Positions 17,163 to 50,643 of a stretch of 64,000 nt of DNA are shown here, piece after piece. Within the stretch, counting starts at the first letter, position 1, and every line of letters starts with the position of its first letter. The notes beneath the pieces were generated by a model. It was not told the origin of the DNA. It saw nothing but the letters and a program-made list of their open reading frames with translations, and did no database searches. The stretch lies in the IMG/VR virus record IMGVR_UViG_3300042391_000634, positions 1 through 64,000 of that record; one strand, given 5' to 3'. The position numbers and the translations under genes are program-made.

Positions 17163-17166
17163 AAAT

Positions 17167-28659: not shown

Positions 28660-28709
28660 AGTTTTAAGTTTAGGATGTAAAGTTAATAAAGATTTAGAAT
28701 ATCACAAAT

Positions 28710-31640: not shown

Positions 31641-33577
31641 CTAAATATTTTCCACTTTATCAACTTTGTTGGAATAAACCTCCAATACATCACCCAACTG
31701 ATTCATATTGTATATTTCAGCCGTCGACTCTCCACCATTTTCACTTGGGTCTAATGTTTCTTTGACACCATCTATTTCTTCCCAACTGATTTCATCGAGG
31801 TCTCCCGATTCATACATTTCTTTGGCAATCTTCACGGCTTGGTTTAAGTCCTCAGCTTTAACTTCAAAGTCGGTTCTCATCCACGTGGTAATCTTTTGGT
31901 CTATAAAGAATTCAAATGTTTTCATTGTTACTTATTTAATTCGTTAATTAATGTGATATCAGCTTCGGACATTTCATCTACCATTACTTTACTTAACTCG
32001 TCGAGATGTTTGCCAGAGAATTTGTCATACCCACCCATTTGGTATTTGGGATAAACAATTTTTGTTTCGGTGTCGATTACAGATGCAACTGATTTTAATT
32101 CTACTATCATGTTAATTAATTTAATTTTCTTATTGACATATAATTTTCTAATTCATCCAAAGAAATACGACCATCGTTAGAACTATAATAACCTTGTAGT
32201 TCGTATCGTTTTTTCCATTTATCAAATGCCTCAAATGCTTTTTTCTTTGAGGGGTAATATGGTTTATCGAACTCAATCGTAAACCCGTCGGGGGATAATA
32301 CTTGATACTTTATCATAGTCCTGCGTTTTTAATTATACAATCTAATTTATATTCAAACTCTTGGGTCATACCCTCAATGTCATACACCCTTTTAGTTTCA
32401 TCGTCGTCGGGATGATAAAATGAGATGTCCACTTTAATTACATTTTCATTGGTTTTTTTAACCATTGTTTGTGAATATTCGGTTTCGTGTTTAGTGTCCA
32501 TATGTTGAGAACCACTAAATCTATTTTGTGAATGAACAACTACAACTTGGTGAGGACCTACCGGTTCCCAACCATCGTTAATTTTATTACCAACTACTAC
32601 TGAAAGTCCTTCGGGACTACTTGATGCTACGATTTTATATTCCATTTGATTTAATTCATCATTAAGTTAAAAAATTTGATACCTAACTCTTGTAATTCTT
32701 TACACTTTCTTTTTTTTACTACTTCATCACGAACGTACATTGACTTATCGGATGTAATACCTAAGTCCATCATAGAAAAGAAGTGTTCCCACTTACCACC
32801 AACGAATAACTCACCTGTAAATCTTTCAAGTGCATTGTAACATTCGTAGGTCATTTTTAATTTAACCCCATTAACTTTCGGTTCTTGTATTACTAACACA
32901 TCGTGGGATGTATCCCTTGTGTGTGATTTACTTTCGTAGATTACTTTATTTTTCATTTGTGATAGTTTTAAATTGATTTAGATTACAAAGATAATTTAAT
33001 ATTGTGTTAGGGAAATGTTAAAGTGTTAACGATATAAGGTAACATAATCACCAAAATACTTTTCAAAAACATTTAATAAGTTTTCGTAATCACCTTTCAT
33101 CATTTCAGATTGAATTACTTTACCATCCAAACCTAATTGTTTTGCAAACTTGGATGCCATACCAATTAATACAAATGCGTTTCCATCGGGACCAGTTAGG
33201 TCGATTTCAATTCCTGATTTTTTTTCGTTGATTGACTTTATCATAACTTAATTTTTATTTTTGTTTATAATTTTTTTCTCAAACCATTGTTTCATTGTTA
33301 ATGGTGTTAGGGCATCGGATAAATCAGTTAGAATATATTCTCCTGATTTAATTTTAGTTTCAGTTTCTTTTTTCGATTCCCCCAAAAATTGATTCCTATA
33401 CTTTCCCGTTGTCTTGGAATAATTCCAATAGGTCTCATCCAAATAAACTCTCCCGTCTTCAATCTTTACAATAATACTTTCGTAGGACTGAAAGATTCTT
33501 AAACTTTCGTTTCTAATTACAATCTGATTGGGAACTTTGTTCCCGTTCGAACTTGTTAAATTTCTAATTGTTGTCAT
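31641..33577 (-). CDS. Seven small early hypothetical ORFs (31641-31925, 31928-32110, 32116-32316, 32313-32645, 32651-32956, 33026-33244, 33248-33577)
   Basis: ORF track; TATCTTTG -7 elements upstream (CAAAGATA at about 32986 and about 33596 on the + strand). Confidence 0.6.
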
Positions 33578-33931
33578 ATTATTTGATTTAGGATACAAAG
33601 ATAATTCATTTTAAATTATACTACAAACTATTTTATGTTAAAACTTTGTTAAGATGTAATACGAATGTTTCACCTGTCGTCCGAGCTATGATATTGTTTG
33701 GCATTGTAATACGTTTGCCAAACAACTTTGGATGTCATCGGAACATGTGGGACTTCGGGAACATCAGGAACATCTTTTTGGGAACATTGGGAACATTGGG
33801 AACATGCGCACTGTGAATATCTTCTGGCAAATGCCAAACAATATTCATAGCTCACCAGGTGCTAGTATTTCCTATCGGACAATAAAAAACCCCCGTATTT
33901 CTACGAGGGTTCGGGGGACAAACAATAACCA

Positions 33932-34777
33932 TTAAACCATATGAACCAAATCTGAAAATATCTCTTGTTCTACTTGACCGATACCACCGAACATTTTTGC
34001 CTCGGTATTATCGTTCTTACTATAAGAGTGTGTTGTGTATTTTGTTACACCACTAAACAAACCCCAAAGGTTATCACCTTTACCTTGAATCTCACCATTT
34101 AAGTCAATATAGAATCTACTTAAATTGTTTTTAGTTCTTGTAGATAATTCATCACTATCTAAACTAAATTCAGGTTTGATGCCAAACAACTTTCGTGTCA
34201 CCTTCTCCTTCAACAAATCGTCAAAACGTGTTTCACTCAATTCAGTAATGAATCTGAATGTTTCTTTTTCTTCTTCCAATACAACGTCTAATCTTCTACA
34301 AATGTCTTCCACTTTTAAAGACATAGACTTTGTGTGTCGAACTTTGTTTTGAAGTCCACTCATCACTCTAAAGAATGTGTTCATACAACTGATAGTCGTA
34401 TTAGAATGACCGAATGCTAATGATGTAGAACCATCAAAAGAATTCACACCTGTTAAATAACCCTCAATTCGGTCGTTACCCAATTTAAGGTCGTTACCTT
34501 TTAATTGAACGTAAATACGTCCACCACCTTTGAACTCACCACCACGATGAATTTCTAAACCTGTTCTACCTGATACTTGATGTAATAAGTCCATCAACTC
34601 ATGGTTCTGATAAGGAACATAACCATCAGAGTGTAAACCCACAATATCTTGTGTGTCGTTTCTAACGATTGCTTTTTTGTTTGGAATACTAATACCACTA
34701 ATGGTTTGTAATTCCTCCTGACGTACCGTCCAATTAAGGTTGGTCTTGTCTAATAATGTTTTTACTTGTTCGTTCAT
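33932..34777 (-). CDS. DUF932-family phage/plasmid protein
   Basis: W.V..E.L, AIVR.DT..IVG.HS..Y...QN, NSFDGSTS..F..S.....CMN, LWGLFSGVTKY.TH. Confidence 0.8.
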   Translation of the reverse strand: MNEQVKTLLDKTNLNWTVRQEELQTISGISIPNKKAIVRNDTQDIVGLHSDGYVPYQNHELMDLLHQVSGRTGLEIHRGGEFKGGGRIYVQLKGNDLKLGNDRIEGYLTGVNSFDGSTSLAFGHSNTTISCMNTFFRVMSGLQNKVRHTKSMSLKVEDICRRLDVVLEEEKETFRFITELSETRFDDLLKEKVTRKLFGIKPEFSLDSDELSTRTKNNLSRFYIDLNGEIQGKGDNLWGLFSGVTKYTTHSYSKNDNTEAKMFGGIGQVEQEIFSDLVHMV

Positions 34778-35089
34778 ATAAATTAATTTAGAGTGTAAAG
34801 GTAGGTCTTTTATATTACCCACCAAATAATATTTGTTAACACTTTGTTAAAGAATATGTAATACGAATGGGATCCACTGTGCCATCTGAATATTGATTGG
34901 CAATTGCCAAACAAATTGTCTACGGTGCCCTGAACCAAGTCGTGTTGTCCTGTTTTTTATATAATAAAGTGGACAAGTGTAATACGTTTGCCAAACAATA
35001 TATTTGCATGCATGATGCAGGAAAGTTTGGACATAAAAAAAGGGATTGTCATACGACAACCCCCTCTTACTTTATCACTACTAACCCTC

Positions 35090-35836
35090 TTAAATGTTTC
35101 TCAAATTAATTCTACTTTCTTTGTTTCTACTAAAATTATAGATTTCTTCTATCATTTTAATATATTCATCTACACTACCACAAAAGTGAATATTAGTTGG
35201 TCTTAACTTTACCTTACGAACAAACTCACTAAAAGAAAAGTCTTTACATCTTGTTAAAGTTTTGATAATCGCTCTTACGAATGTTGAACGATTATAACCC
35301 TCAAACAAAGGTTTCAATTCCATAATGTTCATCGCCCATTCAATCGCCTTATCCATATTCTTTGTAACAAACTTACCACTCTCAAAGTTCTCTCTATCAC
35401 AACCACTTAACGAATTCGTACATAACATCATACATTCAGTTGGTCTTAATTCGGGATATTGTTTCATAAAGTTATTTAACTTAATGTAGTGTGGATTTCC
35501 CTCTACAACAAACCCGTGAATATGGTCGGTTATCGCCCAATTCTTTTGACGACTATTTAAACTTCTAATTGTTTCAAAACCTGCGGTCGTTTCTAAAATA
35601 TAAGAAATAGGAACCCCTACTTCCATAGCGGCGGTTACTCTATGTTGTCCATCAATGATTTCACCTTTCTTGTTGATAACAACATAAGAACCTCTTTCCC
35701 AACCACGAACTTTCATATTGTTTACAATATTCTTTACGTGGGATTTGTTAATAACTCTATTGTCACTTCTAAATGTGAAAATAGAATAATCTTTTGTTTG
35801 GTAAACTTCGTTTACTTTTTTTCCGTTACGTATCAT
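35090..35836 (-). CDS. ParB/Srx N-terminal-like protein
   Basis: NR.IN..HVK.I...M, VVINKKGEIIDGQHRVTAA. Confidence 0.7.
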   Translation of the reverse strand: MIRNGKKVNEVYQTKDYSIFTFRSDNRVINKSHVKNIVNNMKVRGWERGSYVVINKKGEIIDGQHRVTAAMEVGVPISYILETTAGFETIRSLNSRQKNWAITDHIHGFVVEGNPHYIKLNNFMKQYPELRPTECMMLCTNSLSGCDRENFESGKFVTKNMDKAIEWAMNIMELKPLFEGYNRSTFVRAIIKTLTRCKDFSFSEFVRKVKLRPTNIHFCGSVDEYIKMIEEIYNFSRNKESRINLRNI

Positions 35837-36225
35837 TTTTATTTTTGTTCAGATTTTATCCTGTCCCCGAGATTGATTAATAATGATAGAACAAAGATAT
35901 GTTGTATATTATTATATTCCAAGTATTATTTAGAATATTTTAGTTAAGAATATGTTAAAGTGTAATACGAAGATTTCCCCGCTGTTGCTGCAGTACGATA
36001 TTGATTGGCAAATTTTTGACCAGTGTTGATGCAGCTCAGGACCAGTGACGATATTGATTGGCAAATGCCAAACAAGTTTCAGCGCATGCGTTGTGGGACT
36101 CGACTAAGTGTAATACGTTTGCCAAACAATATTCCCTGAACTTCACAGTGCCGCTGAATTTGATAAACAAAAAAAAGGATAGTCTTTCGACTACCCTTCT
36201 TCACCTTTTCCAACCTTATGTATTT

Positions 36226-36771
36226 CTACACAAGTTCTTTTTCCAAGTGTTGTAATACGGACTTACCTTCACTTTCACATTCTTCTTCACCAAAATATCC
36301 ACCACAACTTTCAACTAATGTTTTATGTTCGTGTCCTTTATCACAAGTTTCTATTTCATATACTTCATAACAATAAACTTCACCCGTTAGATACTTATCG
36401 TAAGTTTCAATTTCACCTTTAAGGTATTCTTCAACTTTAGTTTCATCAATACCTTCTTTCTTTATCTTATGTTTAGATACAAAGATAAAACCAACCTGTC
36501 CACTATCCCAACGACAATCAAACGGACTTGTTGATATAGTTATACCCGAGTGGTCATATAGATACAAAGGTAAGATAACAACTTCACCTTCATTAGTAAT
36601 AATACCTTCTTTTAATTCGTCCCAACTATCATAATCTTCAGTTCGATAATCAGTCTTGTCACCAAGTTCATACCTTTTGTGAAAACATACCATCGTTCCC
36701 AAGTTATCCCAATCGGTTCGAGGGTTCATTGGGTTTGTGTCTTGTTCAATTTTTAATTCAAATTTTTTCAT
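36226..36771 (-). CDS. Conserved phage hypothetical protein
   Basis: NPRTDWDNLGTM.CFH.RY.LGD...LPLYLYDHSG.TI...WDSGQVGF...SCGGYFG. Confidence 0.65.
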   Translation of the reverse strand: MKKFELKIEQDTNPMNPRTDWDNLGTMVCFHKRYELGDKTDYRTEDYDSWDELKEGIITNEGEVVILPLYLYDHSGITISTSPFDCRWDSGQVGFIFVSKHKIKKEGIDETKVEEYLKGEIETYDKYLTGEVYCYEVYEIETCDKGHEHKTLVESCGGYFGEEECESEGKSVLQHLEKELV

Positions 36772-37305
36772 ATTGTTTGTTTTAGAGTATAAAGGTAAGT
36801 CTTTTATATAACATACCAAAATATTATCGTTAAGACTTTGTTAAAGAATATATCACCTGTTGGGACCGGCATCGATTGAATATTGGTTGGCAATTGCCAA
36901 ACAAATAGCAGCGCGCGCTGCTTTTCACGGGGTATTGTAATACGTTTGCCAAACAATAACCGCACAGGCCTGTGGCGCATGGTCTACAGCATTTCTTGTT
37001 CATTAATTCTTCTTGTTCACGTTCCGTGAACATAGGTAATACGTGAACACTTTTGCCAGACAATATTTCCTGAATTCGAACCGTCGGGGTGTATTCCCTC
37101 CACTATGTATTACGAAAGTCAATGGTAGTAAGGGTTTAATAATTCTTTAGAGAACTTTTAGTAAGTTTTTAGCAAATATTGTAGCAAATAGTGTGAAACT
37201 TGCCAAACAACTTGTCTACAGCGCGCACCCGGTAGATTCTCTACCAAATAAAAACCCCCCGTATTTCTACGAGGGGAACACAATATAAATCACAAACAGA
37301 ACAAA

Positions 37306-37898
37306 CTAATCTACCATATCATATTTCCAATCCATTTTTTCCATAACCTTCTCAATCTTGTCATACACTTTGGAATCTTCTACTCGGTTGAACATTTCAT
37401 CAAACACAAGTATAGAACTCGGGTCACAAAAATAGGTGTTTGTTTCTTTAACAACAACAACGTTGTATTCATCAACATTATACCAATTACCAACTCTTTG
37501 TAATTTCATATCAATTAATTTTTAGGGTTTAAGTAGATTTCCATTCTCGCGGGAACGACTTTTGCCAGATTACATTCATCACAACATTCGTCATCTTCAT
37601 TTTTAGTTTCTAACGGGTGTGGGTCATTACCATAACCTTCTACTTCTTTGTCACAAAGACAACAGATAAACTTTTCCATTTTTATTTAATTTAATACTTG
37701 AAAAATATCCTTACCAATAATCAATCCTAATGTTCTTCCGTTATCCCATTTAACATTGACAACATCAAAACCAACATTATACACAACTCCTTCACGACCA
37801 ACTAAAATTGGTTGTGGGTCATCTTCCATTGGTTCAATAAGTTTAACTCTTTTACCCATAAGTAATTGTGGGTTTACAAGGAAATCATTTACTATCAT
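37306..37898 (-). CDS. Small ORFs 37306-37509, 37515-37679 (Cys-rich CCLC...CCDEC; absent from the track) and 37686-37898 (DUF4314-like)
   Basis: Manual translation MEKFICCLCDKEVEGYGNDPHP...CCDECN; G.RV.LI..M.DD..PI..G.EG.V...VKWDNGRTLGLI.G.D. Confidence 0.55.
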
Positions 37899-38265
37899 AG
37901 TGTTTGTTTTAGAGTGTAAAGATAAGTGTAATACTTTTATATTACAAACTCATTTAGTTAAAACTATGTTAATGTGTAATACGACCAAACCCGTGGAGGA
38001 AGACCGGATAATTTATTGTTTGGCAAAATGTAAAGTAAAACCCCCACAATATGTAATACGAATTCACCCGTGGGACGAGTTTACTCAGGAGATATTGATT
38101 GGCAACCTTGTTACCTTTTTATATAAAACCATAACATAAGTCAAGTTTTTGAATCAATAAACTTGACATCTGCCAAACAATATCCGGATGGAGACGACAG
38201 GTGAGAGGTGTGGAAATAAAAAACCCCCTACTTTCGTAGAGGGTCTTGGTCTTTGGGAGGAATAA

Positions 38266-38532
38266 TTAATTCAATGGAATTTCTTTACCAATACCATACT
38301 CACAAATTTTGTGTAGTAAGGGTAAAACTCTACTACCGATAATCTCATTCAAATACTCATCTCTGTCAAATTCATCATCGGTGTCATCTTCAATGTTTTT
38401 ACCCGTTTGGTCAAAATACATATCACCAATCATTTCAAGAAATTCGTTATCACTCATTTCTTCAATCAATTGTGTTAATCGGTCAGTAATAACTCCATTA
38501 ACAATTTCTAATACTTTTTCTTTTTTGTTCAT
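38266..38532 (-). CDS. Hypothetical protein
   Basis: Start reassigned to MNKKEK, downstream of the conserved TACCTTTACACTCTAAA module. Confidence 0.6.
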   Translation of the reverse strand: MNKKEKVLEIVNGVITDRLTQLIEEMSDNEFLEMIGDMYFDQTGKNIEDDTDDEFDRDEYLNEIIGSRVLPLLHKICEYGIGKEIPLN

Positions 38533-39630
38533 TTTATTTGTTTTAGAGTGTAAAGGTAATACAATTATAGGACATACCAAAATTCATCAGTTAAAACTTT
38601 GTTAATGTAATACGTTTTCACCCGGGTGTAACTGATTGTTGTGTGGCAATTGCCAAACAAGTTCACCGATGGGATCCACGGTGTGTGTCGTAATACGAAT
38701 CTTTGCCAAACAATAGTTCGGATACTTCACGGGGAAGTGTTCCTTCATTAGAATAATTGCCACACAACATCTTAGCGGAACCCTGACTCAAGTCCGTTGT
38801 GGACATAAAAAACCCCCACCATAGAAATGATGAGGGTAAATCTAAAATGAAAACACAGACAATTACATATAAGACCATTTACGACCAAGAATATTGTTTA
38901 CCATTACACGAAACGATTTTTTATACAAACGATACATTCTATCCTCTCCCGTTGAAGTTCCAATTTTATCACTGAACTTAAAAGTCCATATAAAACGAAC
39001 AATAAAGAAAGGAGTTAAAATAAACACGATAATGATAGTTTGCCAAAGAAATTTCAATAGATACTTCATAATTTTAAAATTTTAAATGAGTTTTTAAATT
39101 ACCCTACAAGGACAATGTAGGACATAAAATAGGTTAATGAGAAACTGAACATTAGTAGTCCGTAGATTTTGATTTTCTTTTCCATTTGATTAAGTAGTTT
39201 AGGACACAAAGATAATACTTTTATCTTTATATTTTCTTATCTATTAAGAATTGGTCGTTAAAATTATGTTAATGTAATACCAAGTGGTGAGGAGTTACGA
39301 AGACACAGGAGAATATTGTGTGGCAAATCGGATATGGTTACGAATATTAACGGATATATACGGATATTGCCAATCAATATCACATTCTACAAGGAATCCA
39401 ACATTCGTTGTATGACAATTGCCAAACCATATTATTTTCTACAACCGAGATCCCTTCCATTTTTATTGTTAAACCTATGTTAAAGGTTTGCCAAACAACA
39501 ATTCGGATTTGGATTCTGTGTTCGGTGTTATGTATGACAATTGCCAAACAATAGTTCGGATTACTTCGTAAGGTTCGGGTCAAAAAAAAACCACTCCTTT
39601 CGGAGTGGTCGGTTTGTAGGGGAACAAACC

Positions 39631-40622: not shown

Positions 40623-41168
40623 ATGAACTTACAAGAAGATATACAAAGGATTAAGGAGGTGATGGGGATTAATGAATTAAGAAACCCGTGGTTCAATTAT
40701 GTGCAATCCAAAACAAAAGAGATTACCGGACAAGATTGGCCTAACTATGTATTAAAAGATTGGTTATATAGTTTCACCAAAAAATATGAGAATAGTGATT
40801 CTCCTGAAGTTTATAAAAACATTGTTAAGTCCTTTGTGGAAAGTTTTGTAGAAGGACACGGTAAGGGTAATTGGGAACATAAGGTATTAGATGTTAGTAT
40901 GAATATTTTTATCCCATCAACACAAGAGAATTTAAAAAAGAAGATAGAAGGTGATATTAACAAAGATATACCCAAAGATGAAGAAAGACATAATGTACAA
41001 CAATCTAAATTAGATAAGGTGGGAGTTTCTCCTGAACCTATTATTGTTCTACAGAAAAAAGACGGTATTGAATTATTGGAAGGTTGGCACAGAACCACAT
41101 CTGCCCTTAATAAATTTGGTACCTATAAACAAAATGCTTGGGTATATGTACCTGATATATTAAAATAA
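40623..41168 (+). CDS. Leader plus ParB/Srx-like domain protein
   Basis: TATTTATA at 40612; MNLQEDIQRIKEVMGINE; PEPIIVLQKKDGIELLEGWHRTTSAL. Confidence 0.65.
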   Translation: MNLQEDIQRIKEVMGINELRNPWFNYVQSKTKEITGQDWPNYVLKDWLYSFTKKYENSDSPEVYKNIVKSFVESFVEGHGKGNWEHKVLDVSMNIFIPSTQENLKKKIEGDINKDIPKDEERHNVQQSKLDKVGVSPEPIIVLQKKDGIELLEGWHRTTSALNKFGTYKQNAWVYVPDILK

Positions 41169-42478: not shown

Positions 42479-42493
42479 ATTGTATTTATACAT

Positions 42494-42937
42494 ATGAAAC
42501 TAATGGACCTGTTAACTGAGAATACTAATGAACCAAGAGTTGTATATTTTAATACTCCCGATGGTTATAGTGGTTCACCGGAAGACCATAAGATGATTAA
42601 GAAGATGAAAACCATCTATAAGGCCCTATCTAAGGGTCGTGGTGAGGTTCAGGTACATCATGGTGATAATTACCCTCCCCTTGATTTATCCTACGAATTA
42701 CCCCCTTTAAACACCGTTGCAATCCTTATTGACTATCCCACTAAGAAACAACTTAAGAATGGTGCCGAAATTGCTTATACGTTTGATGTTGTCGGTAAGG
42801 TGAAATACACCCTCCATAACTTTGAAACACAACGAGATACCGATATTGATAGATTTATGATGCATAAGGGACATGAAATATCGTTTGTCTATAAAAAGAG
42901 ATTTGAAGACTTTGATATTGGTATCACCAGTTCTTAA
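42494..42937 (+). CDS. CTS-like leader (MKLMDLLTEN) plus one KALKKG domain
   Basis: TATTTATA at 42483; KKMKTIYKALSKG...YKKRFEDFDI. Confidence 0.7.
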   Translation: MKLMDLLTENTNEPRVVYFNTPDGYSGSPEDHKMIKKMKTIYKALSKGRGEVQVHHGDNYPPLDLSYELPPLNTVAILIDYPTKKQLKNGAEIAYTFDVVGKVKYTLHNFETQRDTDIDRFMMHKGHEISFVYKKRFEDFDIGITSS

Positions 42938-42978: not shown

Positions 42979-43965
42979 ATGAAAGTATTAATCTCAGAAC
43001 AACAACTAAAACGTATTATAACGGAACAATCATCAGGTGGTTTAATACCATCATTAGGTTATAAAATAATAAATGATATTGAACATACCTATTCATTCAC
43101 CACTTCTGATGGAAAGGTTAGTGGTGGAAATTACAATGGAAAAGAAAAAGAAAGTAATATAAGTGAATATATCAATAATACCATCGGGTTAGATAGTTGG
43201 AATAAATTAAACGATTTATTTAAAGTGCAATTATACTCCTACATGTATCAACACGATTCTGGTGATGGTGGAATGAGAATGTGGTGGATTGCCGGTCTTG
43301 CACAAGCAATTGATTCTAATATTAAAAGACCCCTAATCGGTAAAAAACCTTTGACCGATCCTAACGTGGTTAATGCAATTAAAATAATTAAAGATGCTTG
43401 TAAAAATAACACCATTAATTCATATTATAAACAATGGTTAACTGTTGTCGACAATCAAATGAGTGGTACTGGTAGTCAACACCCCGATAACTATAAAAAC
43501 GTTTGGAAGAATAGACCGAGAGCTATTGAACGTCTAATGAGTGGAGAAAAATGGGATGTGGTTAAAAAAGAATTTAATTCTACAGTTATAAGTGAACCTA
43601 AAAAATCTGTAGATGTTAAAACAACTCCTGTTGACAAACCTAATAATACCCCTATAATCAATTCTAAGACCATTTCTATTAAGTCAGTAGATTTATCTAC
43701 ATTCTTAACCGATATTAAGACAGAAACCCTTAATAAGACACTTGATTTGAATTCTGCAGTTATTGATGTGGATAATCTCTCATTGACCGTTAAATCATCC
43801 GATAAGGGTGTGTTGGTTAAAAAGTTGGTTCTTACCCTATCTACACAGGCAGATGGTAATACTGCGGCCGATAATGTCTTGGGTAAAAATCCTGGTTCTA
43901 AGGTTGTCTCTAAAGGTAAGTTTGAAAGTGGTAAAAGAACATACCATTTGATTGCAATAATCTAA
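42979..43965 (+). CDS. Leader-bearing hypothetical protein (MKVLISEQQLKRIITE)
   Basis: TATTTATA at 42967; 328 aa. Confidence 0.65.
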   Translation: MKVLISEQQLKRIITEQSSGGLIPSLGYKIINDIEHTYSFTTSDGKVSGGNYNGKEKESNISEYINNTIGLDSWNKLNDLFKVQLYSYMYQHDSGDGGMRMWWIAGLAQAIDSNIKRPLIGKKPLTDPNVVNAIKIIKDACKNNTINSYYKQWLTVVDNQMSGTGSQHPDNYKNVWKNRPRAIERLMSGEKWDVVKKEFNSTVISEPKKSVDVKTTPVDKPNNTPIINSKTISIKSVDLSTFLTDIKTETLNKTLDLNSAVIDVDNLSLTVKSSDKGVLVKKLVLTLSTQADGNTAADNVLGKNPGSKVVSKGKFESGKRTYHLIAII

Positions 43966-44069
43966 CCTCGTATACCCCCGTTCACAAGTTTCCGACGCCG
44001 GAACCCCCATTGAAATTTGTCCCTCTCTTTTTGTGTCCGTTAATAATAGTGGGATATTTATATGTGTAT

Positions 44070-45380
44070 ATGAAATTAATTGATATTATATTTGAGAGTG
44101 TTGTTGATTTATCTGAAGTAGTAACTAAAGATGAGTTTATTAAAAGGGCACAACAAGTTCATAAGGATGAAAACGGTAATCCAAAATATAGATATAACAA
44201 TGTTATTTATAAGAACACTAGAGTTCCTATAACTGTTACATGTCCAAAACATGGAGACTTTACGGTGTCTCCTGATAATCACACAAGAGGTAGAGGTTGT
44301 AAAATGTGTGGATATGAAAGTACATCTAAAAAGAAAAGAATGACAAAAGATGAGTTTGTTAAAAAAGCACAACAAGTTCATAAGGATGAAAACGGAAACC
44401 CTTCATACAATTACGATAAGGTAAATTATACAACAGGTAGAGTAAAAGTTCCTATCACATGCCCAATACACGGAGATTTTCTTATTGCACCTAATAGTCA
44501 TTTAGCCAATCATGGATGTCCAAAATGTGGATGGAAAAGGTTGGCACTAGTTAAATCTGATACTAAAGACAATTTCGTTAAAAAAGCGGAACAAATTCAT
44601 AAAGATGAGAATGGAAACCCCATGTATGTTTATAATGACGTAACTTATAAAAATGCCATGACAAAGGTCGATATTACTTGTCCAATACATGGAAATTTTA
44701 ATATGAGTCCAAATGCACATTTAGTGGGTCAAAAATGTCCAAAGTGTTCATTAATCAATAGGTCTAATTTAAGGAGATTCACAAAAGATGAGTTTATTAA
44801 AAGAGCACAACAATCAAATAAAGACGATAATGGAAATCCACTATACACATATGATAATGTAAATTATCATAATACTACTGAGAAAGTGAATATTACTTGT
44901 CCTATACACGGAGATTTTCTAATGTCACCTCAATCTCACTTAATAGGTTCAGGATGTTCTAAATGTAGTGAATCAAAAGGGGAGAAATCAATTAGAAAAC
45001 ATTTAAAAGAAATGAATATCACATTTAACTCACAAGAGAGATTTGGTAGTTGTTTTTCTGTAGGAGAAAAAAGTAAAAGATGTTATAAACTTCCTTTTGA
45101 CTTTTTCATACCAAACATAAAAACCGCAATTGAGGTCGATGGTACTCCACATTTCCAACCTAAATTCGGAGAGGAACAACTTAACTCAACAATATTCAAC
45201 GATAAAATAAAAAATAAATTTGTTAAATCGTCTAATCAAATTAATAAATTAATTAGGTTATATTATGATGGAAAAAATATGGATGAATTAATTTCAGAAT
45301 TAAATCGTCTTCTCAAAGAAAAAACATCTAACAAAATAGTTTTATCTAAAGGTTACCCTAAAGGGGGTTGGAACAAATAA
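44070..45380 (+). CDS. Leader plus four DUF723-like CPxHG repeats plus PD-(D/E)XK (Vsr/DUF559-like) endonuclease
   Basis: F...AQQ.HKDENGNP.Y.Y..V.Y.....V.ITCP.HG.F...P..H..G.GC.KC x4; SKGEK.I, LPFDFFIP....AIEVDG..HF. Confidence 0.8.
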   Translation: MKLIDIIFESVVDLSEVVTKDEFIKRAQQVHKDENGNPKYRYNNVIYKNTRVPITVTCPKHGDFTVSPDNHTRGRGCKMCGYESTSKKKRMTKDEFVKKAQQVHKDENGNPSYNYDKVNYTTGRVKVPITCPIHGDFLIAPNSHLANHGCPKCGWKRLALVKSDTKDNFVKKAEQIHKDENGNPMYVYNDVTYKNAMTKVDITCPIHGNFNMSPNAHLVGQKCPKCSLINRSNLRRFTKDEFIKRAQQSNKDDNGNPLYTYDNVNYHNTTEKVNITCPIHGDFLMSPQSHLIGSGCSKCSESKGEKSIRKHLKEMNITFNSQERFGSCFSVGEKSKRCYKLPFDFFIPNIKTAIEVDGTPHFQPKFGEEQLNSTIFNDKIKNKFVKSSNQINKLIRLYYDGKNMDELISELNRLLKEKTSNKIVLSKGYPKGGWNK

Positions 45381-45662
45381 TTAACCAATACTAATACTCT
45401 TAATATCTCTAATTGAGATATTCTTTAATTTTAATGTTCCGTGAGCAAATGGAATGAACTTACCTGACTGTTGAAAGTGCATAAAGACGTAATAGAGGTA
45501 TTGTGGGTCCAAGACATCAGTTTGTATTACCTTAACCCCGATACGTTCAGAATCGAACTCTTTTACAGGCATACCGACGGTTTTATCCGATCCCTTTCTA
45601 ACCAACCAAAAATCCGCTTCGGGAAAGTTGATTTTAAATTCACATAAATCTCCTAATGTCAT
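45381..45662 (-). CDS. Small protein resembling a Type I R-M specificity (HsdS) fragment
   Basis: MTLGDLCE...LDPQYLYYVF......G....GT..LKNISIRDIKSISI; TATTTAT directly upstream on the minus strand. Confidence 0.45.
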   Translation of the reverse strand: MTLGDLCEFKINFPEADFWLVRKGSDKTVGMPVKEFDSERIGVKVIQTDVLDPQYLYYVFMHFQQSGKFIPFAHGTLKLKNISIRDIKSISIG

Positions 45663-45692
45663 AATCATAAATATCTGGTATTTATATACAGT

Positions 45693-46784
45693 ATGAAAAT
45701 TATTATAACGGAGGAACAACTTAACAATATAATATCTGAACACGGATATGGTAGTAAACCTTTACCACAAGAAGAGGTGGATAAAAGATTATTGAAAGCA
45801 AAGAAGGTCGCCGTTAAATTTCCAAACCCAAGACAATTCTCATTAAAATACCCCAACTTATGGAATTTTCTTAGAAGTAAAGGATTACTTGATGATGTGT
45901 TCCCTAATAGAAAATTATACAAAAATGATGGTTATTGGACCCCCGAGACGATATCACAAGAAGCAAGTAAGTATAACACTAAAACTGAATTTTTGAGGTC
46001 TAATCAAGTTGCATATAAAAAGGCGGTTGAGTTAGGTATATTAAACGATTTAATACCTATAGATGGTAGATATGGTTCGTCTGGTAATAAAAAGAAATGG
46101 ACATTGGAAAAATCAATTCAGGTTGCAAAAGAATTTGAAGGGACAAAGACAGAATTTTGGAAAAAACATCCAGCAGCAACATTGGAGTTGAGAAGAAACA
46201 ATTTATTGAAATCTATATTTCCTGACGATAAACGAAAAGGTGATGATGATATATTGATAAATCAAGCAAAAGAATATGAAAATAGATCGGTATTAAGACG
46301 TGATAATCCATCTTTATATAGTAAGTTAGTGATTAGAGGGATGTTATATGATGTATTTCCAAAAGTAGAAATGACCGCCGATGAGATTATTACAAAGGCT
46401 AAAGAATATGAAACACCAACTGAATTATCAAAAGGTAATCAAAATTTATATTTAAAATTAAAAAAAATACCGAATGGTTATGAATTGGCGTTCGGTAAAG
46501 AATATAAATACAAAAAATTATTTGACATTGCGAAACAATACCAAAACAAATATGAATTACTTAAGGGTAATGCGTATGTATATAATAATTTGGAAAAATT
46601 GGGATTATTAAATAAAGCATATGGTATTGAACCAATTGAAAAATTATCCTTAACAAACACATTTAATAAAATTAATCCTGAACCAAAACGAAAGGATAAA
46701 ACAAATAGTAAAATAAAATCATATGAGGATAAAACTACAAAAGAAAAAATGGAATTAATAAGACAATTACGTAGTAAAAATTAA
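45693..46784 (+). CDS. Leader plus tandem helical repeats of the type found in 46935-48152; no nuclease motif seen
   Basis: WT.E....A.KY.TK.EF...N..AY..A...G.L repeated about six times. Confidence 0.65.
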   Translation: MKIIITEEQLNNIISEHGYGSKPLPQEEVDKRLLKAKKVAVKFPNPRQFSLKYPNLWNFLRSKGLLDDVFPNRKLYKNDGYWTPETISQEASKYNTKTEFLRSNQVAYKKAVELGILNDLIPIDGRYGSSGNKKKWTLEKSIQVAKEFEGTKTEFWKKHPAATLELRRNNLLKSIFPDDKRKGDDDILINQAKEYENRSVLRRDNPSLYSKLVIRGMLYDVFPKVEMTADEIITKAKEYETPTELSKGNQNLYLKLKKIPNGYELAFGKEYKYKKLFDIAKQYQNKYELLKGNAYVYNNLEKLGLLNKAYGIEPIEKLSLTNTFNKINPEPKRKDKTNSKIKSYEDKTTKEKMELIRQLRSKN

Positions 46785-46879
46785 ATAGTTTTTCTATAAA
46801 AATTAGATATTTATTAATATACTAGTATTAAATAACTAGATATAAAGAATTAGAATACCAGTTTATACTGGGTAAAACC

Positions 46880-46905
46880 AATCCTCTCCGTTGAGAGGTT
46901 TTTTT
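46880..46905 (+). terminator. Intrinsic terminator
   Basis: CCTCTC-CGTT-GAGAGG followed by a T tract. Confidence 0.7.
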
Positions 46906-46934
46906 ATTTATATAATCGATATTTATATGTGTAT

Positions 46935-48152
46935 ATGAAATTATTAGACATTATATTTGAAAATAAACCTCGTAATGAAAAATCAGATGAAGATTTAAAA
47001 AGAGAGTTGATAAGTAGTCCGAATACAACTGGATTAACATTTGATAATGCTAAATTTATATATAACTCACAACAAAAAAGATATCAAATAACAAATTATT
47101 CTTGTAAATCACACCCCACGTGGTTCAAAGATGGATGGTCCAGAGTAAGTCAAGTTATGGATGGTAGAGCCACATGTGCGGAATGTGCGAAATTAAAACA
47201 AAGGAACAGGCTTGATAAAGAAAGATTAGAAAAAAATGAATTAATAAAAAAATTAGCAGAAAAATACGGTGACCAATTTAAAGAAAAAGAACCCTTATTA
47301 TATGCTGACGGTATTGCAAATAAAATTATTGAACCAAAAAGAAAAAGACCAGGTGAATGGACGGCGAAGGAGATTGAGGATATTGCAGATAACTACACAG
47401 ACTTAAACGATTTTTTTAATAAAGAAAATGCGGCGTATCAAATGGCAGTTAAAATGGGAATAAAAGACCATATAGTTGCACATATGAGTCTTAAAAGACG
47501 TAATTTATCATTTGAAGATATACAAAAAATGGCCGAACCTTTTAAACATAAAATTGAATTTTCAAGAAACGATCCTGCGGCCTATAGAACGGCATATGAC
47601 AATGGGTGGATTGATAAAATTAAAGAGTGGATACCATTAGGTAATAAAGAAAAAAGAATGGTTTACGCTTATGAATTTTATGATAAAAAAGGAAATCCAT
47701 TAGCGATATATGTTGGTTTAACATTAAATGAAGATAGAAGAGGTAAAGAACATAGGGGTCAATGGGTTTCCCGTTCTGGAAAAGAATCTCCGGTTTATAG
47801 ATATATTATAGATAATAAGTTAAAACCAATTTATAAAGTATTGTCAAATGGATACATTCCTTACAAAGAAGCCATTGATATGGAATGTTATTATCAAAAT
47901 GATTTTTATAAAAAAGACAAACACGAAGATGGTTCTTTAGTTTGGAAACCTTTACATAGTGTAAAATGTGGTGGTCTCGGAGGATTCATAAAATGGACTG
48001 AAGAAAAATTAAGAAAGGAAGTGTCAAAATATGAAACACTAAAAGATTTTACCAAATATTCTGGTGGAGCCCCAAGTGCAGCAAAACGATTGGGTATATA
48101 TTATGATTTAATAAAAAATTTAAGTAGAAGGGGAAATATTAATATAAAATAA
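46935..48152 (+). CDS. Leader plus GIY-YIG homing-endonuclease-like protein with helical repeats
   Basis: RMVYAYEF......AIYVGLT....RR..EH...E.Y; C-x2-C; AAY..A...G repeats. Confidence 0.75.
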   Translation: MKLLDIIFENKPRNEKSDEDLKRELISSPNTTGLTFDNAKFIYNSQQKRYQITNYSCKSHPTWFKDGWSRVSQVMDGRATCAECAKLKQRNRLDKERLEKNELIKKLAEKYGDQFKEKEPLLYADGIANKIIEPKRKRPGEWTAKEIEDIADNYTDLNDFFNKENAAYQMAVKMGIKDHIVAHMSLKRRNLSFEDIQKMAEPFKHKIEFSRNDPAAYRTAYDNGWIDKIKEWIPLGNKEKRMVYAYEFYDKKGNPLAIYVGLTLNEDRRGKEHRGQWVSRSGKESPVYRYIIDNKLKPIYKVLSNGYIPYKEAIDMECYYQNDFYKKDKHEDGSLVWKPLHSVKCGGLGGFIKWTEEKLRKEVSKYETLKDFTKYSGGAPSAAKRLGIYYDLIKNLSRRGNINIK

Positions 48153-48154: not shown

Positions 48155-48676
48155 ATGAAACTACAAGACATATTATTAGAGAAGTTAAGGGACATGGTGT
48201 CAATCCCAATCTACCATCATACCACAGAAGAACGTGCTTTAGGTATTATGAATAGTAATATGTTGACAGGGTCAAAACAATATGAGGAGGTTTTAAATTT
48301 AGATAGGGTATTAAAACAATCCAAACATAAAACAATGGTTTCTTTTACTCGTGATAAGAACTTTATACCGGATGGGTCTATTGGCAATTCTGGTGACGGT
48401 CCTCGTATTAAACCCGATATGTTGAACGTAATCTTTGTTGCAGATAGAAGTCGTCTTAAAACACGTTATAGAGTGGTTCCATTTGATTATGGAACAATTG
48501 CAAATAAAGCATGGATGGACGAAATACCTCGTAGTCGTAAAAATCCAGAAGTGGAGGAAAGAGTATTAACTGATAGAATATATCCATTAAGACAATATCT
48601 TACAAACATCATTTATACAGGTCAAGATCCTGAGGTACAAAAGAAGATAGATGAATATCTATCTGGAATTAAGTAA
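48155..48676 (+). CDS. Leader (MKLQDILLE) plus ADP-ribosyltransferase-like domain
   Basis: PIYHHTT...ALGIM.SN.L, VSFTRDK, E.EERV: an H-x-T / S-x-T / E-x-E pattern. Confidence 0.55.
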   Translation: MKLQDILLEKLRDMVSIPIYHHTTEERALGIMNSNMLTGSKQYEEVLNLDRVLKQSKHKTMVSFTRDKNFIPDGSIGNSGDGPRIKPDMLNVIFVADRSRLKTRYRVVPFDYGTIANKAWMDEIPRSRKNPEVEERVLTDRIYPLRQYLTNIIYTGQDPEVQKKIDEYLSGIK

Positions 48677-48688: not shown

Positions 48689-50101
48689 ATGAAGCTTCAG
48701 GTAACAGAATCACAATTAAAACTTATTGAACAACAACAGTTAAATGAACTGAAGTGGTTGGGTGATATTAAATCACACATTCATAGATTAGACATACCTT
48801 TAACTCCGTCCTTTGTAAATTATATTTGGGGTAAACAAAGAGTCACAACGTTTCATATTGGAGATGTTAACGGTATAGATAAGGTGGGTGAAATGGTCGG
48901 AACAAGAAAATCATTATCCACATTTAGATTTATGGAAAAGTATATGTTGAAGGACATTAAAGGTATACAGACTGAAGGTGGAATTATATATCAAATAGAA
49001 GGAGATTTACAATTTGATGCTCCAACTGACATTATGAGTACGCCAGACGAATCGGGAAGAAGATGGATTACAATACACACATTACCAATTGAATTTGTTG
49101 AAAAATTTTATGGTGAATTTAAAAAACACAATAAGTTTAATTATATAAACGAACCAAAAGATTTAATTAGTTATTATAGGTGGATTGATGGATTTATTAG
49201 GGACCACGCAAAAGAAATTCGAGAACATTTTACCGACATCAAGAAAAATAGAGGAGATAGAGAAAGTACGTGGAACGAGACAGTTGTAAATAATATCCAA
49301 ATTAAAGATATTCTTTGGAGAGAATCAATTGTTGCATTTTTAGAAACATGGGAGACTACAGAACAAAAAATAAAAGTAATACAAGAGATTGGAACCAAAT
49401 TAAGTTCAATTGCCACCGGAGATGTTTATTTATCTGATGGTAAAGGAACGTTTGGTTTTAGAGATATTAACCCCATAAAATGGGTTGAACGAAGGGGAGG
49501 GTTAACCGATTTTAAAAAATACGTTAAAAAATTCCACGTAGATAGGGAACCAAGAACTATACATATTAACGAAGATAAACCAAACCCAAACAATCCACCA
49601 TTTGAGAAACGAATTGAGGGGGGTATTTTAAGTACACCCGATAAACCTGTTGATAATACTGCTTGTGTTATTTTTGGTGGAGTTAGTTATGCGACACCTA
49701 AATGGATGTTAAGTCAAATGCCACAAGAACTAAAAGATAAAAAAACAATTTTAGTATTACCATATACAAGTGATATAACACAAGCAAAAAGAATATTGGG
49801 TAAAACGTCCATAAAATCTGTTTTAGGTTTTAGTCAAGGTGGACTTAAAGCGTGGCCAGCAAGTGGTGAATATGAGTTTGTTGGGTTAATTGATCCAACA
49901 ACAAAAGAAGATTCACTTAGATACCACATTAATGATAAAAGGGTTCATATGATTTATAACCCGTCTGGTTGGGGATTTCCTGAAGTTGTTAAATGTCAGA
50001 AAAAAGCGGCAAAAATAATGTTAGGTAATGCAATATTACTTAATATAGGACATAGTGAAATGCCGGCTGAATTCTTTAAAAGATTTGGAAATTACCTTTA
50101 A
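48689..50101 (+). CDS. Leader plus two-domain protein; C-terminal alpha/beta-hydrolase-like domain
   Basis: TATTTATA at 48677; INED linker; nucleophile elbow LGFSQGG; C-terminal His in GHSEMP. Confidence 0.55.
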   Translation: MKLQVTESQLKLIEQQQLNELKWLGDIKSHIHRLDIPLTPSFVNYIWGKQRVTTFHIGDVNGIDKVGEMVGTRKSLSTFRFMEKYMLKDIKGIQTEGGIIYQIEGDLQFDAPTDIMSTPDESGRRWITIHTLPIEFVEKFYGEFKKHNKFNYINEPKDLISYYRWIDGFIRDHAKEIREHFTDIKKNRGDRESTWNETVVNNIQIKDILWRESIVAFLETWETTEQKIKVIQEIGTKLSSIATGDVYLSDGKGTFGFRDINPIKWVERRGGLTDFKKYVKKFHVDREPRTIHINEDKPNPNNPPFEKRIEGGILSTPDKPVDNTACVIFGGVSYATPKWMLSQMPQELKDKKTILVLPYTSDITQAKRILGKTSIKSVLGFSQGGLKAWPASGEYEFVGLIDPTTKEDSLRYHINDKRVHMIYNPSGWGFPEVVKCQKKAAKIMLGNAILLNIGHSEMPAEFFKRFGNYL

Positions 50102-50643
50102 CTAAGAGAACTTAATGCTCTTGATAATAAACTCTTAACTTTTTTTGCGTAATTGTTTGTTCCACAAGATGGTGGTATACAATAGATACGATTTAACTTG
50201 GCAACGTATTGGTCTTTAGACAAATTAGATAACTTATTGTAATCTTGCCACATTTTATAGTCTTTTACCGAATCTTGCCAATTATCGAAACTAGCATGAC
50301 CCCTATTCGGACCTTTAGATAATGTCTGTCTTTGTCTTGGATGTTTCATCCCAAACAGGTTGTTATTATCTAAAAATATACCACTTTTAAAATATCCAGT
50401 TTCCAACATAGATTGAGCCATTGCAACATCTGGATACATAACTCCTTGATTTTTAAGTTCTTGTCCTAAGTTTTTCTCAGAAAATGGTAAAGGACCTTCT
50501 TCGGTTTTCTTCTGTTTCTTTTGTTCAGGAGAGGTTAGTTCCTTATATTTATCATAAACATACTTACCAATTTGAATTGGATTAACGATTTGTTCATTAA
50601 TCATCTTTTCAAGGTCTTTTTGTTTAATTTTAATAATTTTCAT
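50098..50643 (-). CDS. Leader plus glucosaminidase (GH73-like peptidoglycan hydrolase)
   Basis: VAMAQSMLETGYF.S.....NNNLFGMK...GHASFDNWQDSVKDY; leader ends MINEQ. Confidence 0.8.
   Translation of the reverse strand: MKIIKIKQKDLEKMINEQIVNPIQIGKYVYDKYKELTSPEQKKQKKTEEGPLPFSEKNLGQELKNQGVMYPDVAMAQSMLETGYFKSGIFLDNNNLFGMKHPRQRQTLSKGPNRGHASFDNWQDSVKDYKMWQDYNKLSNLSKDQYVAKLNRIYCIPPSCGTNNYAKKVKSLLSRALSSLS

What the first reader, a model, noticed from the sequence alone, without database searches (positions are those of the whole stretch)
44050..48152. Homing-endonuclease-like genes have acquired the late promoter and head-targeting leader module
Seen: GATATTTATATGTGTATATGAAATTA(A/T)T(T/A)GA(T/C)ATTATATTTGA is nearly identical before 44070 (CPxHG x4 plus PD-(D/E)XK) and 46935 (GIY-YIG), giving MKLIDIIFES and MKLLDIIFEN on unrelated nucleases. 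The intervening 45693 gene has the other leader type and only the helical repeats of the GIY-YIG protein. Inference: selfish nucleases hitch-hiking into the capsid (immediate homing or exclusion of co-infecting phage) or domesticated injected nucleases; 45693 could be a nuclease-less competitor or immunity factor.
Basis: partly seen in the sequence, partly recalled or inferred. Interest (0 to 1): 0.66.

Follow-up and report, generated by a model that had tools for sequence, protein, structure and literature searches.

The report
Nuclease genes carrying capsid-targeting-like leaders
In a 336-kb T4-related giant phage, two homing-endonuclease-type nuclease genes start with the same late-promoter box and short leader peptide that ends like a T4 capsid-targeting signal, so they are probably loaded into the phage head and injected, though no experiment shows this yet.

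Summary
A 44-nt block is 41/44 identical in front of and into genes 44070 and 46935. Gene 44070 encodes four CPxHG zinc fingers plus a Vsr-like PD-(D/E)XK nuclease domain. Gene 46935 encodes a GIY-YIG nuclease. Gene 45693 has the other leader type and only the helical repeats.

The window is the first 64 kb of a 335.6-kb T4-superfamily jumbo phage. That phage encodes a gp21-type prohead protease, a scaffold protein and a gp23-type capsid protein. All leader types end in hydrophobic-x-Glu, the T4 protease cleavage rule.

The box TATTTATA lies 3-25 nt before 66 ORFs, among them terminase, portal, protease and tail fibres. Homologues in other phages lack the leader. Orthologues in relatives swap leader types but keep the junction Glu. 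The nuclease content between well-conserved flanking genes differs between related phages.

Best reading (confidence 0.5): a T-even-style internal-protein cassette locus whose cargo includes nucleases of homing-endonuclease origin, packaged by a CTS-like propeptide and injected. Packaging, cleavage and injection are inferred, not shown.

Main rival: the module is only an expression and recombination cassette.

The "immunity factor" idea for 45693 has no support. This is a new variant of a known kind.

The parts
42494..42937 (+). Conserved left-flank gene (147 aa) with a type-1 leader, MKLMDLLTE
   Evidence: 77-86% amino-acid identity in related contigs, while the cassettes to its right differ. 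TATTTATA lies 3 nt before the ATG.
42979..43965 (+). 328-aa gene with a type-2 leader, MKVLISEQQLKRIITE; function unknown
44053..44096 (+). Module copy 1: TATTTATA box (44055-44062), spacer TGTGTAT (44063-44069), ATG and nine leader codons (44070-44096)
   Evidence: 41/44 identical to copy 2. The same module, with about 40 nt of upstream sequence, stands before different nuclease bodies in 18 further unique genes from related contigs.
44070..45380 (+). 436-aa protein: type-1 leader, four treble-clef zinc-finger repeats, then a Vsr-like PD-(D/E)XK nuclease domain (aa 301-430)
   Evidence: Pfam DUF723/DUF4379. phrog_559, 681 and 9084, all endonuclease or homing endonuclease. Alignment invariants. 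AF2 model plus Vsr Z 11.1 and I-Bth0305I Z 9.7.
45381..45668 (-). Small antisense ORF (95 aa; 120 aa from an upstream GTG), unassigned
   Evidence: No Pfam or PHROG match. It may not be a gene.
45679..45692 (+). TATTTATA box (45679-45686) and 6-nt spacer before gene 45693
45693..46784 (+). 363-aa protein: type-2 leader, about six helical repeats of roughly 40 aa (read by eye), a lysine-rich tail, no nuclease domain
   Evidence: BLASTP to the repeats of 46935. phrog_20046. Orthologues are nuclease-less and mostly carry type-2 leaders.
46883..46905 (+). Terminator-like hairpin plus T-run, closing the 45693 unit
46918..46961 (+). Module copy 2: TATTTATA box (46920-46927), spacer TGTGTAT (46928-46934), ATG and nine leader codons (46935-46961)
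46935..48152 (+). 405-aa protein: type-1 leader, one CKxHP...CxxC finger, a long helix, helical repeats, a GIY-YIG domain (aa 239-345), one more repeat
   Evidence: Alignment invariants. PF01541 in 18 of 19 relatives. AF2 model plus I-TevI Z 8.5. The N-terminal finger is shared with PD-(D/E)XK proteins P0017-P0024.
48155..48676 (+). Conserved right-flank gene (173 aa) with a type-1 leader, MKLQDILLE; candidate ADP-ribosyltransferase (a lead only)
   Evidence: 92-98% identity in related contigs. Orthologues carry four leader kinds that all end at an invariant Glu. Weak ADP-ribosyltransferase hints.

Best explanation
The region is a hypervariable cassette locus in the plastic part of a T4-superfamily jumbo phage. 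It is the analogue of the T-even internal-protein (IP) loci.

Each cassette begins with a late-type TATTTATA box a few bases before the ATG, and with a short N-terminal leader. The type-1 leader is 9 aa (MKLxD-hydrophobic-hydrophobic-x-E). The type-2 leader is about 16-23 aa (...ITE(S/E)QL..II.E).

The leader most likely acts as a capsid-targeting propeptide. It would bind the scaffold core of the prohead, and the gp21-type protease would cut it off after hydrophobic-x-Glu. The mature protein would stay in the head and enter the cell with the DNA.

Two of the cargo proteins are site-specific nucleases of homing-endonuclease ancestry: a Vsr-like PD-(D/E)XK nuclease with zinc fingers, and a GIY-YIG nuclease with a finger and helical repeats. 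A third is the repeat module alone. Once injected, the nucleases would cut host, prophage or competing-phage DNA before any phage gene is expressed.

The near-identity of the two nuclease modules at the DNA level, and the presence of the same module before different nucleases in relatives, is best explained by homologous recombination in the module, which swaps cassettes.

Shown: the sequence features, folds, gene content, leader distribution, leader swapping and locus variability.

Inferred: promoter timing, targeting, cleavage, injection and target DNA.
For: T4-type head machinery is present:
- Peptidase_S77 (gp21) at genome 122913-123596, 72.5 bits.
- An acidic scaffold protein and a gp23-type capsid protein, 211 bits.
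- The capsid protein's N-terminal region contains ...LINE followed by AAVAD, which fits the same cleavage rule.

T4 literature:
- A 10-aa CTS suffices for packaging.
- CTS-EcoRI and CTS-staphylococcal-nuclease fusions were packaged and delivered (PMC9026906; PMC3012670).
- Alt is cut at ITE-6 and LTE-619 (PMC5694885).

Leader census:
- Ten type-1 leaders, all between 15.5 and 48.7 kb.
- About 11 type-2 leaders at N-termini, nearly all behind the box.

Conservation is at the peptide level, not the DNA level. Codons differ between genes, with a mean of 52% nucleotide identity. The residue between the hydrophobic position and the Glu varies freely.

Leaders are exchangeable:
- The same GIY-YIG body carries type 1 in P0001-P0004 and type 2 in P0005 and P0007-P0016.
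- The 48155 family carries four leader kinds with an invariant junction Glu.

The leader is a separate short helix of low confidence in both models.

The box plus type-1 leader precedes at least 25 unrelated protein clusters in IMG/VR contigs. One of three larger records that could be searched has the T4-type protease.

Locus variability: flanking genes are 77-98% identical, while the nucleases between them are 26-44% identical or differ in number.
Against: - There is no virion proteome, N-terminal sequence or transcript data for this phage or any relative.
- The leaders do not resemble the T4 CTS in sequence; only length, charge pattern and ending agree.
- The protease-leader complex prediction gave no answer.
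- The box lies so close to the ATG that the mRNAs may be leaderless. The first codons could then be constrained for expression rather than targeting.
- The nuclease modules are conserved at the DNA level, spacer included. That needs only recombination, not a working peptide.
- The nearest cultured relative by capsid protein, Flavobacterium phage immuto, has no type-1 leader.
Confidence: 0.5

Rival explanations
1. The module is only an expression and recombination cassette. The late box, spacer and first codons provide transcription and (leaderless) translation starts, plus a patch of homology that lets free-standing homing-endonuclease genes and other ORFs move between phages, as PeSL elements do in T4-type phages. 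The encoded peptide has no targeting role, and the nucleases act in the cytoplasm late in infection (homing or marker exclusion).
For: - The nuclease modules are near-identical at the DNA level, including the non-coding spacer TGTGTAT. That spacer is found in 18 of 24 nuclease-cluster genes and in only 1 gene outside that cluster.
- The same junction holds different nucleases in relatives.
- The box lies 3-7 nt from the ATG at 33 ORFs.
- There is precedent for promoter-bearing shuffling cassettes (PMC2839356).
Against: - Outside the nuclease pair, the leaders are conserved as peptides and not as DNA.
- Two or more unrelated leader sequences all end in hydrophobic-x-Glu, and the junction Glu is invariant across leader types.
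- Structural late genes use the same box without any such leader.
- A recombination role and a targeting role are not mutually exclusive.
Confidence: 0.27
2. The leaders do bring the proteins into the prohead or to the protease, but only transiently. The proteins act during head assembly or DNA packaging, or are activated or destroyed by the protease, and are not injected.
For: [quoted passage not shown] Two small leader-bearing genes sit next to the capsid gene.
Against: Site-specific nucleases and cell-wall hydrolases (glucosaminidase 50098c; genome 319736) have no evident role inside a prohead. The cargo genes are variable, which is not expected for assembly factors.
Confidence: 0.1
3. The similarity is chance or low-complexity AT-rich sequence, or the start codons are wrong.
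For: The genome is 31% G+C. Some gene callers extend these ORFs upstream through the box (P0006, P0013, P0024).
Against: - The 26-mer, searched with up to 2 mismatches, is found only at the two gene starts in 335 kb.
- 62% of TATTTATA occurrences lie just before an ORF, against 7% for the reverse complement.
- More than 100 independent examples exist in other contigs.
Confidence: 0.01

Closest known systems
T-even internal proteins (IPI, IPII, IPIII and more than 30 variants) with their capsid targeting sequence (CTS)
   Same: - Short N-terminal leader starting with MK and ending in hydrophobic-x-Glu.
- A T4-type prohead protease is present.
- Unrelated cargo bodies sit behind a shared leader.
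- The genes cluster in small hypervariable loci (PMC9026906, PMC3012670, PMC2839356, PMC12373910).
   Different: - The leader sequences are unrelated to MKTYQEFIAE, and at least two or three leader families coexist.
- The cargo here is large, multidomain nucleases rather than small basic restriction inhibitors.
- The host is probably Bacteroidota.
- Nothing has been shown experimentally.
T4 Alt (ADP-ribosyltransferase packaged in the head and injected)
   Same: An enzyme, not just a small inhibitor, that carries a short N-terminal propeptide cut at ITE-6 and is injected (PMC5694885). The neighbouring gene 48155 may be an ADP-ribosyltransferase with a type-1 leader.
   Different: Alt is not a nuclease. 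The assignment of 48155 as an ADP-ribosyltransferase rests only on weak hints.
Engineered CTS-EcoRI and CTS-staphylococcal-nuclease fusions in T4 (Black laboratory)
   Same: A nuclease behind a CTS is packaged with the DNA and delivered (PMC9026906 section 2.7; PMC3012670).
   Different: Those fusions are artificial. The case here would be a natural equivalent.
Free-standing phage homing endonucleases (I-TevI-type GIY-YIG; I-Bth0305I-type Vsr-like PD-(D/E)XK)
   Same: The catalytic folds and residues match. The architecture is a DNA-binding module plus a nuclease. The 44070 family is multi-copy in many large phages, found in 900 records.
   Different: - They carry a leader and a late box.
- They are single-copy in this genome.
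- They sit at a fixed cassette junction rather than inside or beside a conserved target gene.
- Homing itself was not tested.
PeSL mobile regulatory cassettes of T4-type phages
   Same: Conserved promoter-containing intergenic modules that flank variable ORFs and mediate shuffling (PMC2839356).
   Different: PeSLs are early sigma70-like promoters with stem-loops and do not extend into the coding sequence. Here the box is late-type and the homology continues through nine codons.
Propeptides of phiKZ/SPN3US-type jumbo phage head proteins
   Same: Many head and ejection proteins are cut by a T4-related protease at a small motif ending in Glu (PMC5694885).
   Different: Those propeptides are long and individual, not a shared short leader.

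Membership tests
T4-type CTS / internal-protein system | The phage encodes a gp21-type prohead protease, a scaffold core and a gp23-type capsid protein | tested here: met
   PF03420 at 72.5 bits. PF07068 at 211 bits. An acidic 420-aa scaffold protein lies between them.
T4-type CTS / internal-protein system | A short N-terminal leader shared by unrelated proteins and ending in (L/I/V)-x-Glu | tested here: met
   The junction Glu is invariant.
T4-type CTS / internal-protein system | The leader sequence is homologous to the T4 CTS | tested here: not met
   The leaders share only length, the MK start and the ending with MKTYQEFIAE (sequence recalled from memory). This is functional analogy, not family membership.
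T4-type CTS / internal-protein system | The protein is present in virions, with the leader removed, and is injected | not testable with these tools
   No cultured relative was found.
GIY-YIG nuclease (46935) | GIY-YIG fold with the catalytic Tyr, Tyr, Arg, His and Glu | tested here: met
   I-TevI at Z 8.5, rmsd 3.1, 87 of 94 residues aligned. Y244, Y259, R269, H273 and E317 are invariant. The window protein's own Pfam score is below threshold (E 0.045).
Vsr-like PD-(D/E)XK nuclease (44070) | Restriction-endonuclease-like fold with a conserved acidic core | tested here: met
   Vsr at Z 11.1, rmsd 2.5, 112 residues aligned. I-Bth0305I at Z 9.7. D344, E355, D357 and H361 are invariant.
Homing endonuclease (mobile, self-propagating) | Presence/absence polymorphism at a defined site, with cleavage of the empty allele | tested here: inconclusive
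   The cassette content at one junction differs between relatives. No empty site, target sequence or cleavage could be examined. The genes are single-copy in this genome.
T4-type late promoter | A conserved AT-rich octamer just upstream of morphogenesis genes, on the coding strand only | tested here: met
   66 of 107 TATTTATA occurrences lie before ORFs, against 7 of 107 for the reverse complement. Terminase, portal, protease and tail fibres are among them. Timing and the sigma factor were not tested. The octamer differs from T4's TATAAATA.
Nuclease-immunity pair (45693 with 46935) | Strict linkage of the two genes across genomes | tested here: not met
   The 45693 orthologue in L144 has no GIY-YIG neighbour among the window proteins matched. 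In L142 only a 29%-identical copy lies about 1.4 kb downstream of the GIY-YIG gene. In L047 and L099 a partial homologue lies elsewhere, next to PD-(D/E)XK cassettes.

The most novel reading that the evidence does not exclude
A widespread group of uncultured T4-like phages, probably of Bacteroidota, keeps an integron-like exchangeable arsenal of capsid-loaded effectors addressed by two or three interchangeable leader peptides. Within it, nucleases descended from homing endonucleases serve as pre-made first-strike weapons, injected with the genome to cut rival phage, prophage or host DNA. The leader-plus-promoter module doubles as the recombination site that swaps these weapons between phages.
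Probability: 0.35. Interest if true: 0.8.

Novelty: new variant of a known kind. Interest (0 to 1): 0.62.

Why it matters
If the leaders are true capsid-targeting signals, injected proteins of a large group of uncultured phages can be read straight from sequence. There are at least about 21 candidates in this genome and at least 25 unrelated families in related contigs.

Known natural CTS cargo in T4 is restriction inhibitors and an ADP-ribosyltransferase. In the literature searched here, nucleases have been put there only by engineering.

Natural capsid-loaded, site-specific nucleases would be a new kind of phage-phage or phage-host weapon. They would also be a new fate for homing endonuclease genes.

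The short leaders could also serve as packaging tags for protein delivery by non-coliphage T4 relatives.

Tried and rejected
- Near and protein searches of cultured phage genomes: no close relative of the region, of the 319-aa leader protein or of 48155. No virion proteome could therefore be used.
- Flavobacterium phage immuto (closest cultured capsid protein): no type-1 leader.
- Sequence search of PDB with the proteins or their profiles: nothing useful. The folds were needed instead.
- Complex prediction of the prohead protease with residues 1-40 of the 46935 product: 'no answer', score 0.00. This is not evidence either way.
I did not try to reach reads by another route.
- Paralogues of the three proteins elsewhere in the genome: none.
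- The C-terminal (E)SKLSL tail seen in relatives was not found within 25 residues of a stop on any sizeable ORF of this genome. Gene 45693 has an internal EKLSL motif.
- Sigma70-type promoter scan: at chance level, 35 found against 35.4 expected.
- Pfam at lenient thresholds for 45381c, 42494, 48689 and the 142-aa neighbour of the capsid gene: nothing.
- Rejected: the idea that the leader is a secretion signal, because it is acidic and amphipathic with no hydrophobic core.
- Rejected: the idea that 45693 is a freshly decayed nuclease gene, because its family is conserved without a nuclease domain.


Full report
**What the window is**

The window is bases 1-64,000 of a 335,630-bp virus record (31% G+C, CheckV-complete). 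The genome encodes:
- a T4-type prohead protease (Peptidase_S77, 72.5 bits, genome 122913-123596);
- next to it, a very acidic 420-aa scaffold-like protein;
- a gp23-type major capsid protein (211 bits);
- a T4-type large terminase and a portal protein.

The closest cultured capsid proteins are those of Microcystis phage Mel-JY01 and Flavobacterium phage immuto, at about 41-45% identity over part of the protein. Early-looking promoters of the TTTG...TAnnTTTG kind and lipoprotein-like signal peptides in the window point to a Bacteroidota host. This is my reading, not a tested result.

**Check of the observation**

Positions 44053-44096 and 46918-46961 share 26 exact bases and 41 of 44 overall. 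The 26-mer, searched with up to two mismatches, is found nowhere else in the genome.

The block consists of three parts:
- a TATTTATA box;
- a 7-nt spacer, TGTGTAT;
- the ATG and nine codons, encoding MKLIDIIFE and MKLLDIIFE.

Gene 44070:
- It has four CP(K/I)HG...C..C units, matching the DUF723/DUF4379 treble-clef fingers.
- It matches phage endonuclease families phrog_559, 681 and 9084.
- In the AlphaFold model (pLDDT 77.6), residues 301-430 superpose on Vsr endonuclease (Z 11.1, rmsd 2.5, 112 residues).
- The same residues superpose on the catalytic domain of the phage homing endonuclease I-Bth0305I (Z 9.7, 96 of 97 residues) (also Foldseek).
- D344, E355, D357 and H361 are invariant in 13 relatives.

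Gene 46935:
- It has no Pfam hit above threshold.
- Eighteen of 19 family members touch PF01541 (best E 8e-8).
- Y244, Y259, G261, R269, H273 and E317 are invariant.
- Residues 239-345 of the model (pLDDT 79.4) match the I-TevI catalytic domain at Z 8.5, followed by other GIY-YIG enzymes.

Gene 45693 begins MKIIITEEQLNNIISE. It shares only the roughly 40-aa helical repeats with 46935.

**The box behaves like a late promoter**

- TATTTATA occurs 107 times in the genome. Of these, 66 lie 3-23 nt upstream of an ORF of 60 aa or more on the same strand.
- Its reverse complement TATAAATA, which tests the opposite orientation, does so 7 times in 107. Composition-matched octamers do so in 7-13% of cases.
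- Genes behind the box include the large terminase, portal, prohead protease and two tail-fibre proteins.
- Half of the spacings are only 3-7 nt. If the box works like T4's -10-type late element, these mRNAs start at or within a few bases of the AUG.
- Timing and start sites were not measured.

**The leaders**

Ten genes in the genome, all between 15.5 and 48.7 kb, start with M-K-L-x-(D/S)-hydrophobic-hydrophobic-x-E.

About eleven more start with a longer amphipathic leader of the form ...I-T-E-(S/E)-Q-L-x-x-I-I-x-E, nearly all directly behind the box. The same pattern is rare inside proteins: 7 internal matches in six frames.

A third kind (...LNEQ.SRIK..MG-hydrophobic-x-E) is seen at 40623 and in relatives.

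All kinds end in (I/L/V)-x-Glu.
- This is the rule of the T4 prohead protease. Examples are the 10-aa CTS of the internal proteins and the Alt cuts at ITE-6 and LTE-619.
- The capsid protein of this phage has ...LINE followed by AAVAD at the place where gp23 is cut in T4 (the T4 site is recalled from my own knowledge).

Among the ten type-1 genes the codons differ freely, with a mean of 52% nucleotide identity over -25..+27. The residue between the hydrophobic position and the Glu is hypervariable. So the conservation is of a peptide, not of DNA. The exception is the nuclease pair, at 79%.

In both structure models the leader is a short detached helix of low confidence.

**The leader is an add-on and is exchangeable**

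- The 44070 family is found in 900 phage records, often in many copies per genome. The alignments start at query residue 13-23, so the leader is not part of it.
- Metagenomic orthologues of the GIY-YIG protein (50-97% identity) carry a type-1 leader in P0001-P0004 and a type-2 leader in P0005 and P0007-P0016.
- The family of the neighbouring gene 48155 carries four different leader kinds, all ending at one invariant Glu just before the conserved body.

**Spread of the module**

These gave 102 different proteins in 25 unrelated clusters.

- Most clusters have unknown function.
- One cluster is the nuclease group.
- One protein is an RNase T-type exonuclease, and one matches Pfam GP88.
- One of three larger records that could be searched also has the T4-type protease. 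All three are fragments.
- In about 1 Mb of these loci, 84 box-proximal ORFs have type-1 leaders (81 of them by the design of the search) and 24 have strict type-2 leaders. Typical structural-looking proteins use the box without a leader.

**A cassette locus**

In related contigs the flanking genes are well conserved: 42494 at 77-86%, 48155 at 92-98% and 48689 at 69-80% amino-acid identity. Between them lie different numbers and kinds of leader-bearing nucleases, at 42-44% or about 26% identity to 44070, and some are GIY-YIG proteins.

Twenty unique genes carry the box with the TGTGTAT spacer. Fifteen of them, the window's 44070 included, share about 40 nt of upstream sequence plus the 27-nt leader almost base for base. 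Similarity then collapses a few codons after the leader.

The TGTGTAT spacer is found in 18 of 24 nuclease-cluster genes and in only one gene outside that cluster.

This is the pattern expected if recombination within the module exchanges cassettes. It resembles what has been proposed for PeSL elements and for the two T-even IP loci. In the window, the two copies are direct repeats flanking 44070, the small antisense ORF and 45693.

**Gene 45693**

Its relatives (40-64% identity) are repeat-only proteins, mostly with type-2 leaders. Only distant relatives (P0049, P0050) join such repeats to a GIY-YIG domain. It is therefore a stable nuclease-less lineage, probably a DNA-binding protein sent to the same destination.

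It is not consistently linked to a GIY-YIG gene. I therefore see no support for a dedicated immunity or competitor role, although it cannot be excluded.

**Interpretation**

The most economical reading is that this phage, like T4, loads accessory proteins into the prohead through short propeptides that its protease removes. The nuclease genes would then be cargo in a polymorphic internal-protein-type locus.

Work with engineered CTS-EcoRI and CTS-staphylococcal nuclease shows that a nuclease can share a T4 head with the DNA and be delivered. Other leader-bearing cargo here includes two glucosaminidases.

What remains inferred is everything biochemical: promoter timing, binding to the scaffold, cleavage, retention, injection and the DNA target.

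The main alternative is that the module is merely an expression and recombination cassette. It explains the DNA-level identity of the nuclease modules. It does not explain the peptide-level pattern shared by unrelated leader families. The two readings can both be true.

My confidence is 0.5 for targeting and injection, 0.27 for the cassette-only reading and 0.1 for transient prohead targeting.

**Steps that failed**

- The complex prediction gave no verdict.

**Novelty**

The principle (CTS, polymorphic IP loci, regulatory shuffling cassettes) is known from T-even phages. Four things are new:
- the leader families;
- the large and varied cargo set;
- the setting in uncultured jumbo T4 relatives;
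- natural nuclease cargo of homing-endonuclease descent.

I rate this a new variant of a known kind.

Noticed in passing
whole genome; e.g. window 44055-44069, 46920-46934, 42480-42493: The late-type box is TATTTATA, the reverse complement of T4's TATAAATA. At 33 ORFs it lies only 3-7 nt before the ATG, so many late mRNAs may be leaderless or nearly so.
   Followed up: partly
window 48155-48676: This 173-aa protein has a type-1 leader and is 92-98% conserved in relatives. H21, S63-x-T65-R66 and E132-x-E134-E135 are invariant. The nearest named Atlas clusters are DarT/PARP (0.92) and Arr (0.89). Pfam Tox-ART-HYD1 matches at E 0.05 or weaker in 6 of 16 members. It is possibly an ADP-ribosyltransferase, which would parallel the injected T4 Alt. 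This is a lead only.
   Followed up: partly
proteins P0002-P0024, loci L056, L064, L121; window 46626-46661: Many related nuclease proteins end in a conserved tail, (T/G)E(S)KLSL(M/I)..L, that resembles the core of the type-2 leader. Gene 45693 has EPIEKLSLTNTF internally. P0007 and P0011 are in-frame fusions of the GIY-YIG protein, through this tail, to the body of the 48155 homologue. It could be a 3' recombination scar or a C-terminal signal; T4 Alt is also cut at its C-terminus.
   Followed up: partly
window 40623-41168; L144 10657-12076: A third leader family...LNEQ.SRIK..MG(I/L)xE, also sits behind the TATTTATA box.
   Followed up: no
genome 127141-127964 (L004 2765-3588, minus strand): Two small genes with type-2 leaders lie directly after the capsid gene. 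One ends in a basic CWKGY...PNCV motif, which also ends P0083, a relative of 48155. They are candidate internal head proteins. No family was found.
   Followed up: partly
window 50098-50643 (-); genome 319736-321145; window 62241-63083: There are three cell-wall hydrolase genes. Two glucosaminidases have N-terminal leaders of the same general kind. The GH19/PG-binding enzyme has none.
   Followed up: partly
window 45381-45668 (-): An antisense 95-aa ORF lies between the cassettes. It has no family match and no late box. It may be spurious.
   Followed up: partly
window about 3300-17500: A long run of small paralogous genes whose products start M(I/K)(K)PFKFF. One of them weakly matched the gp23 Pfam model, below cut-off.
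   Followed up: no
window 28018-39000 (-), 51013, 59674, 60781: Genes are preceded by TTTG...TA..TTTG-type sequences about 20 nt before the ATG, and several products have lipoprotein-like signal peptides. This fits early, host-type promoters of a Bacteroidota host.
   Followed up: no
L124 6685-7530: In a related contig, an RNase T/DnaQ-type exonuclease also carries the box and a type-1 leader. This is a further nuclease-type cargo.
   Followed up: no
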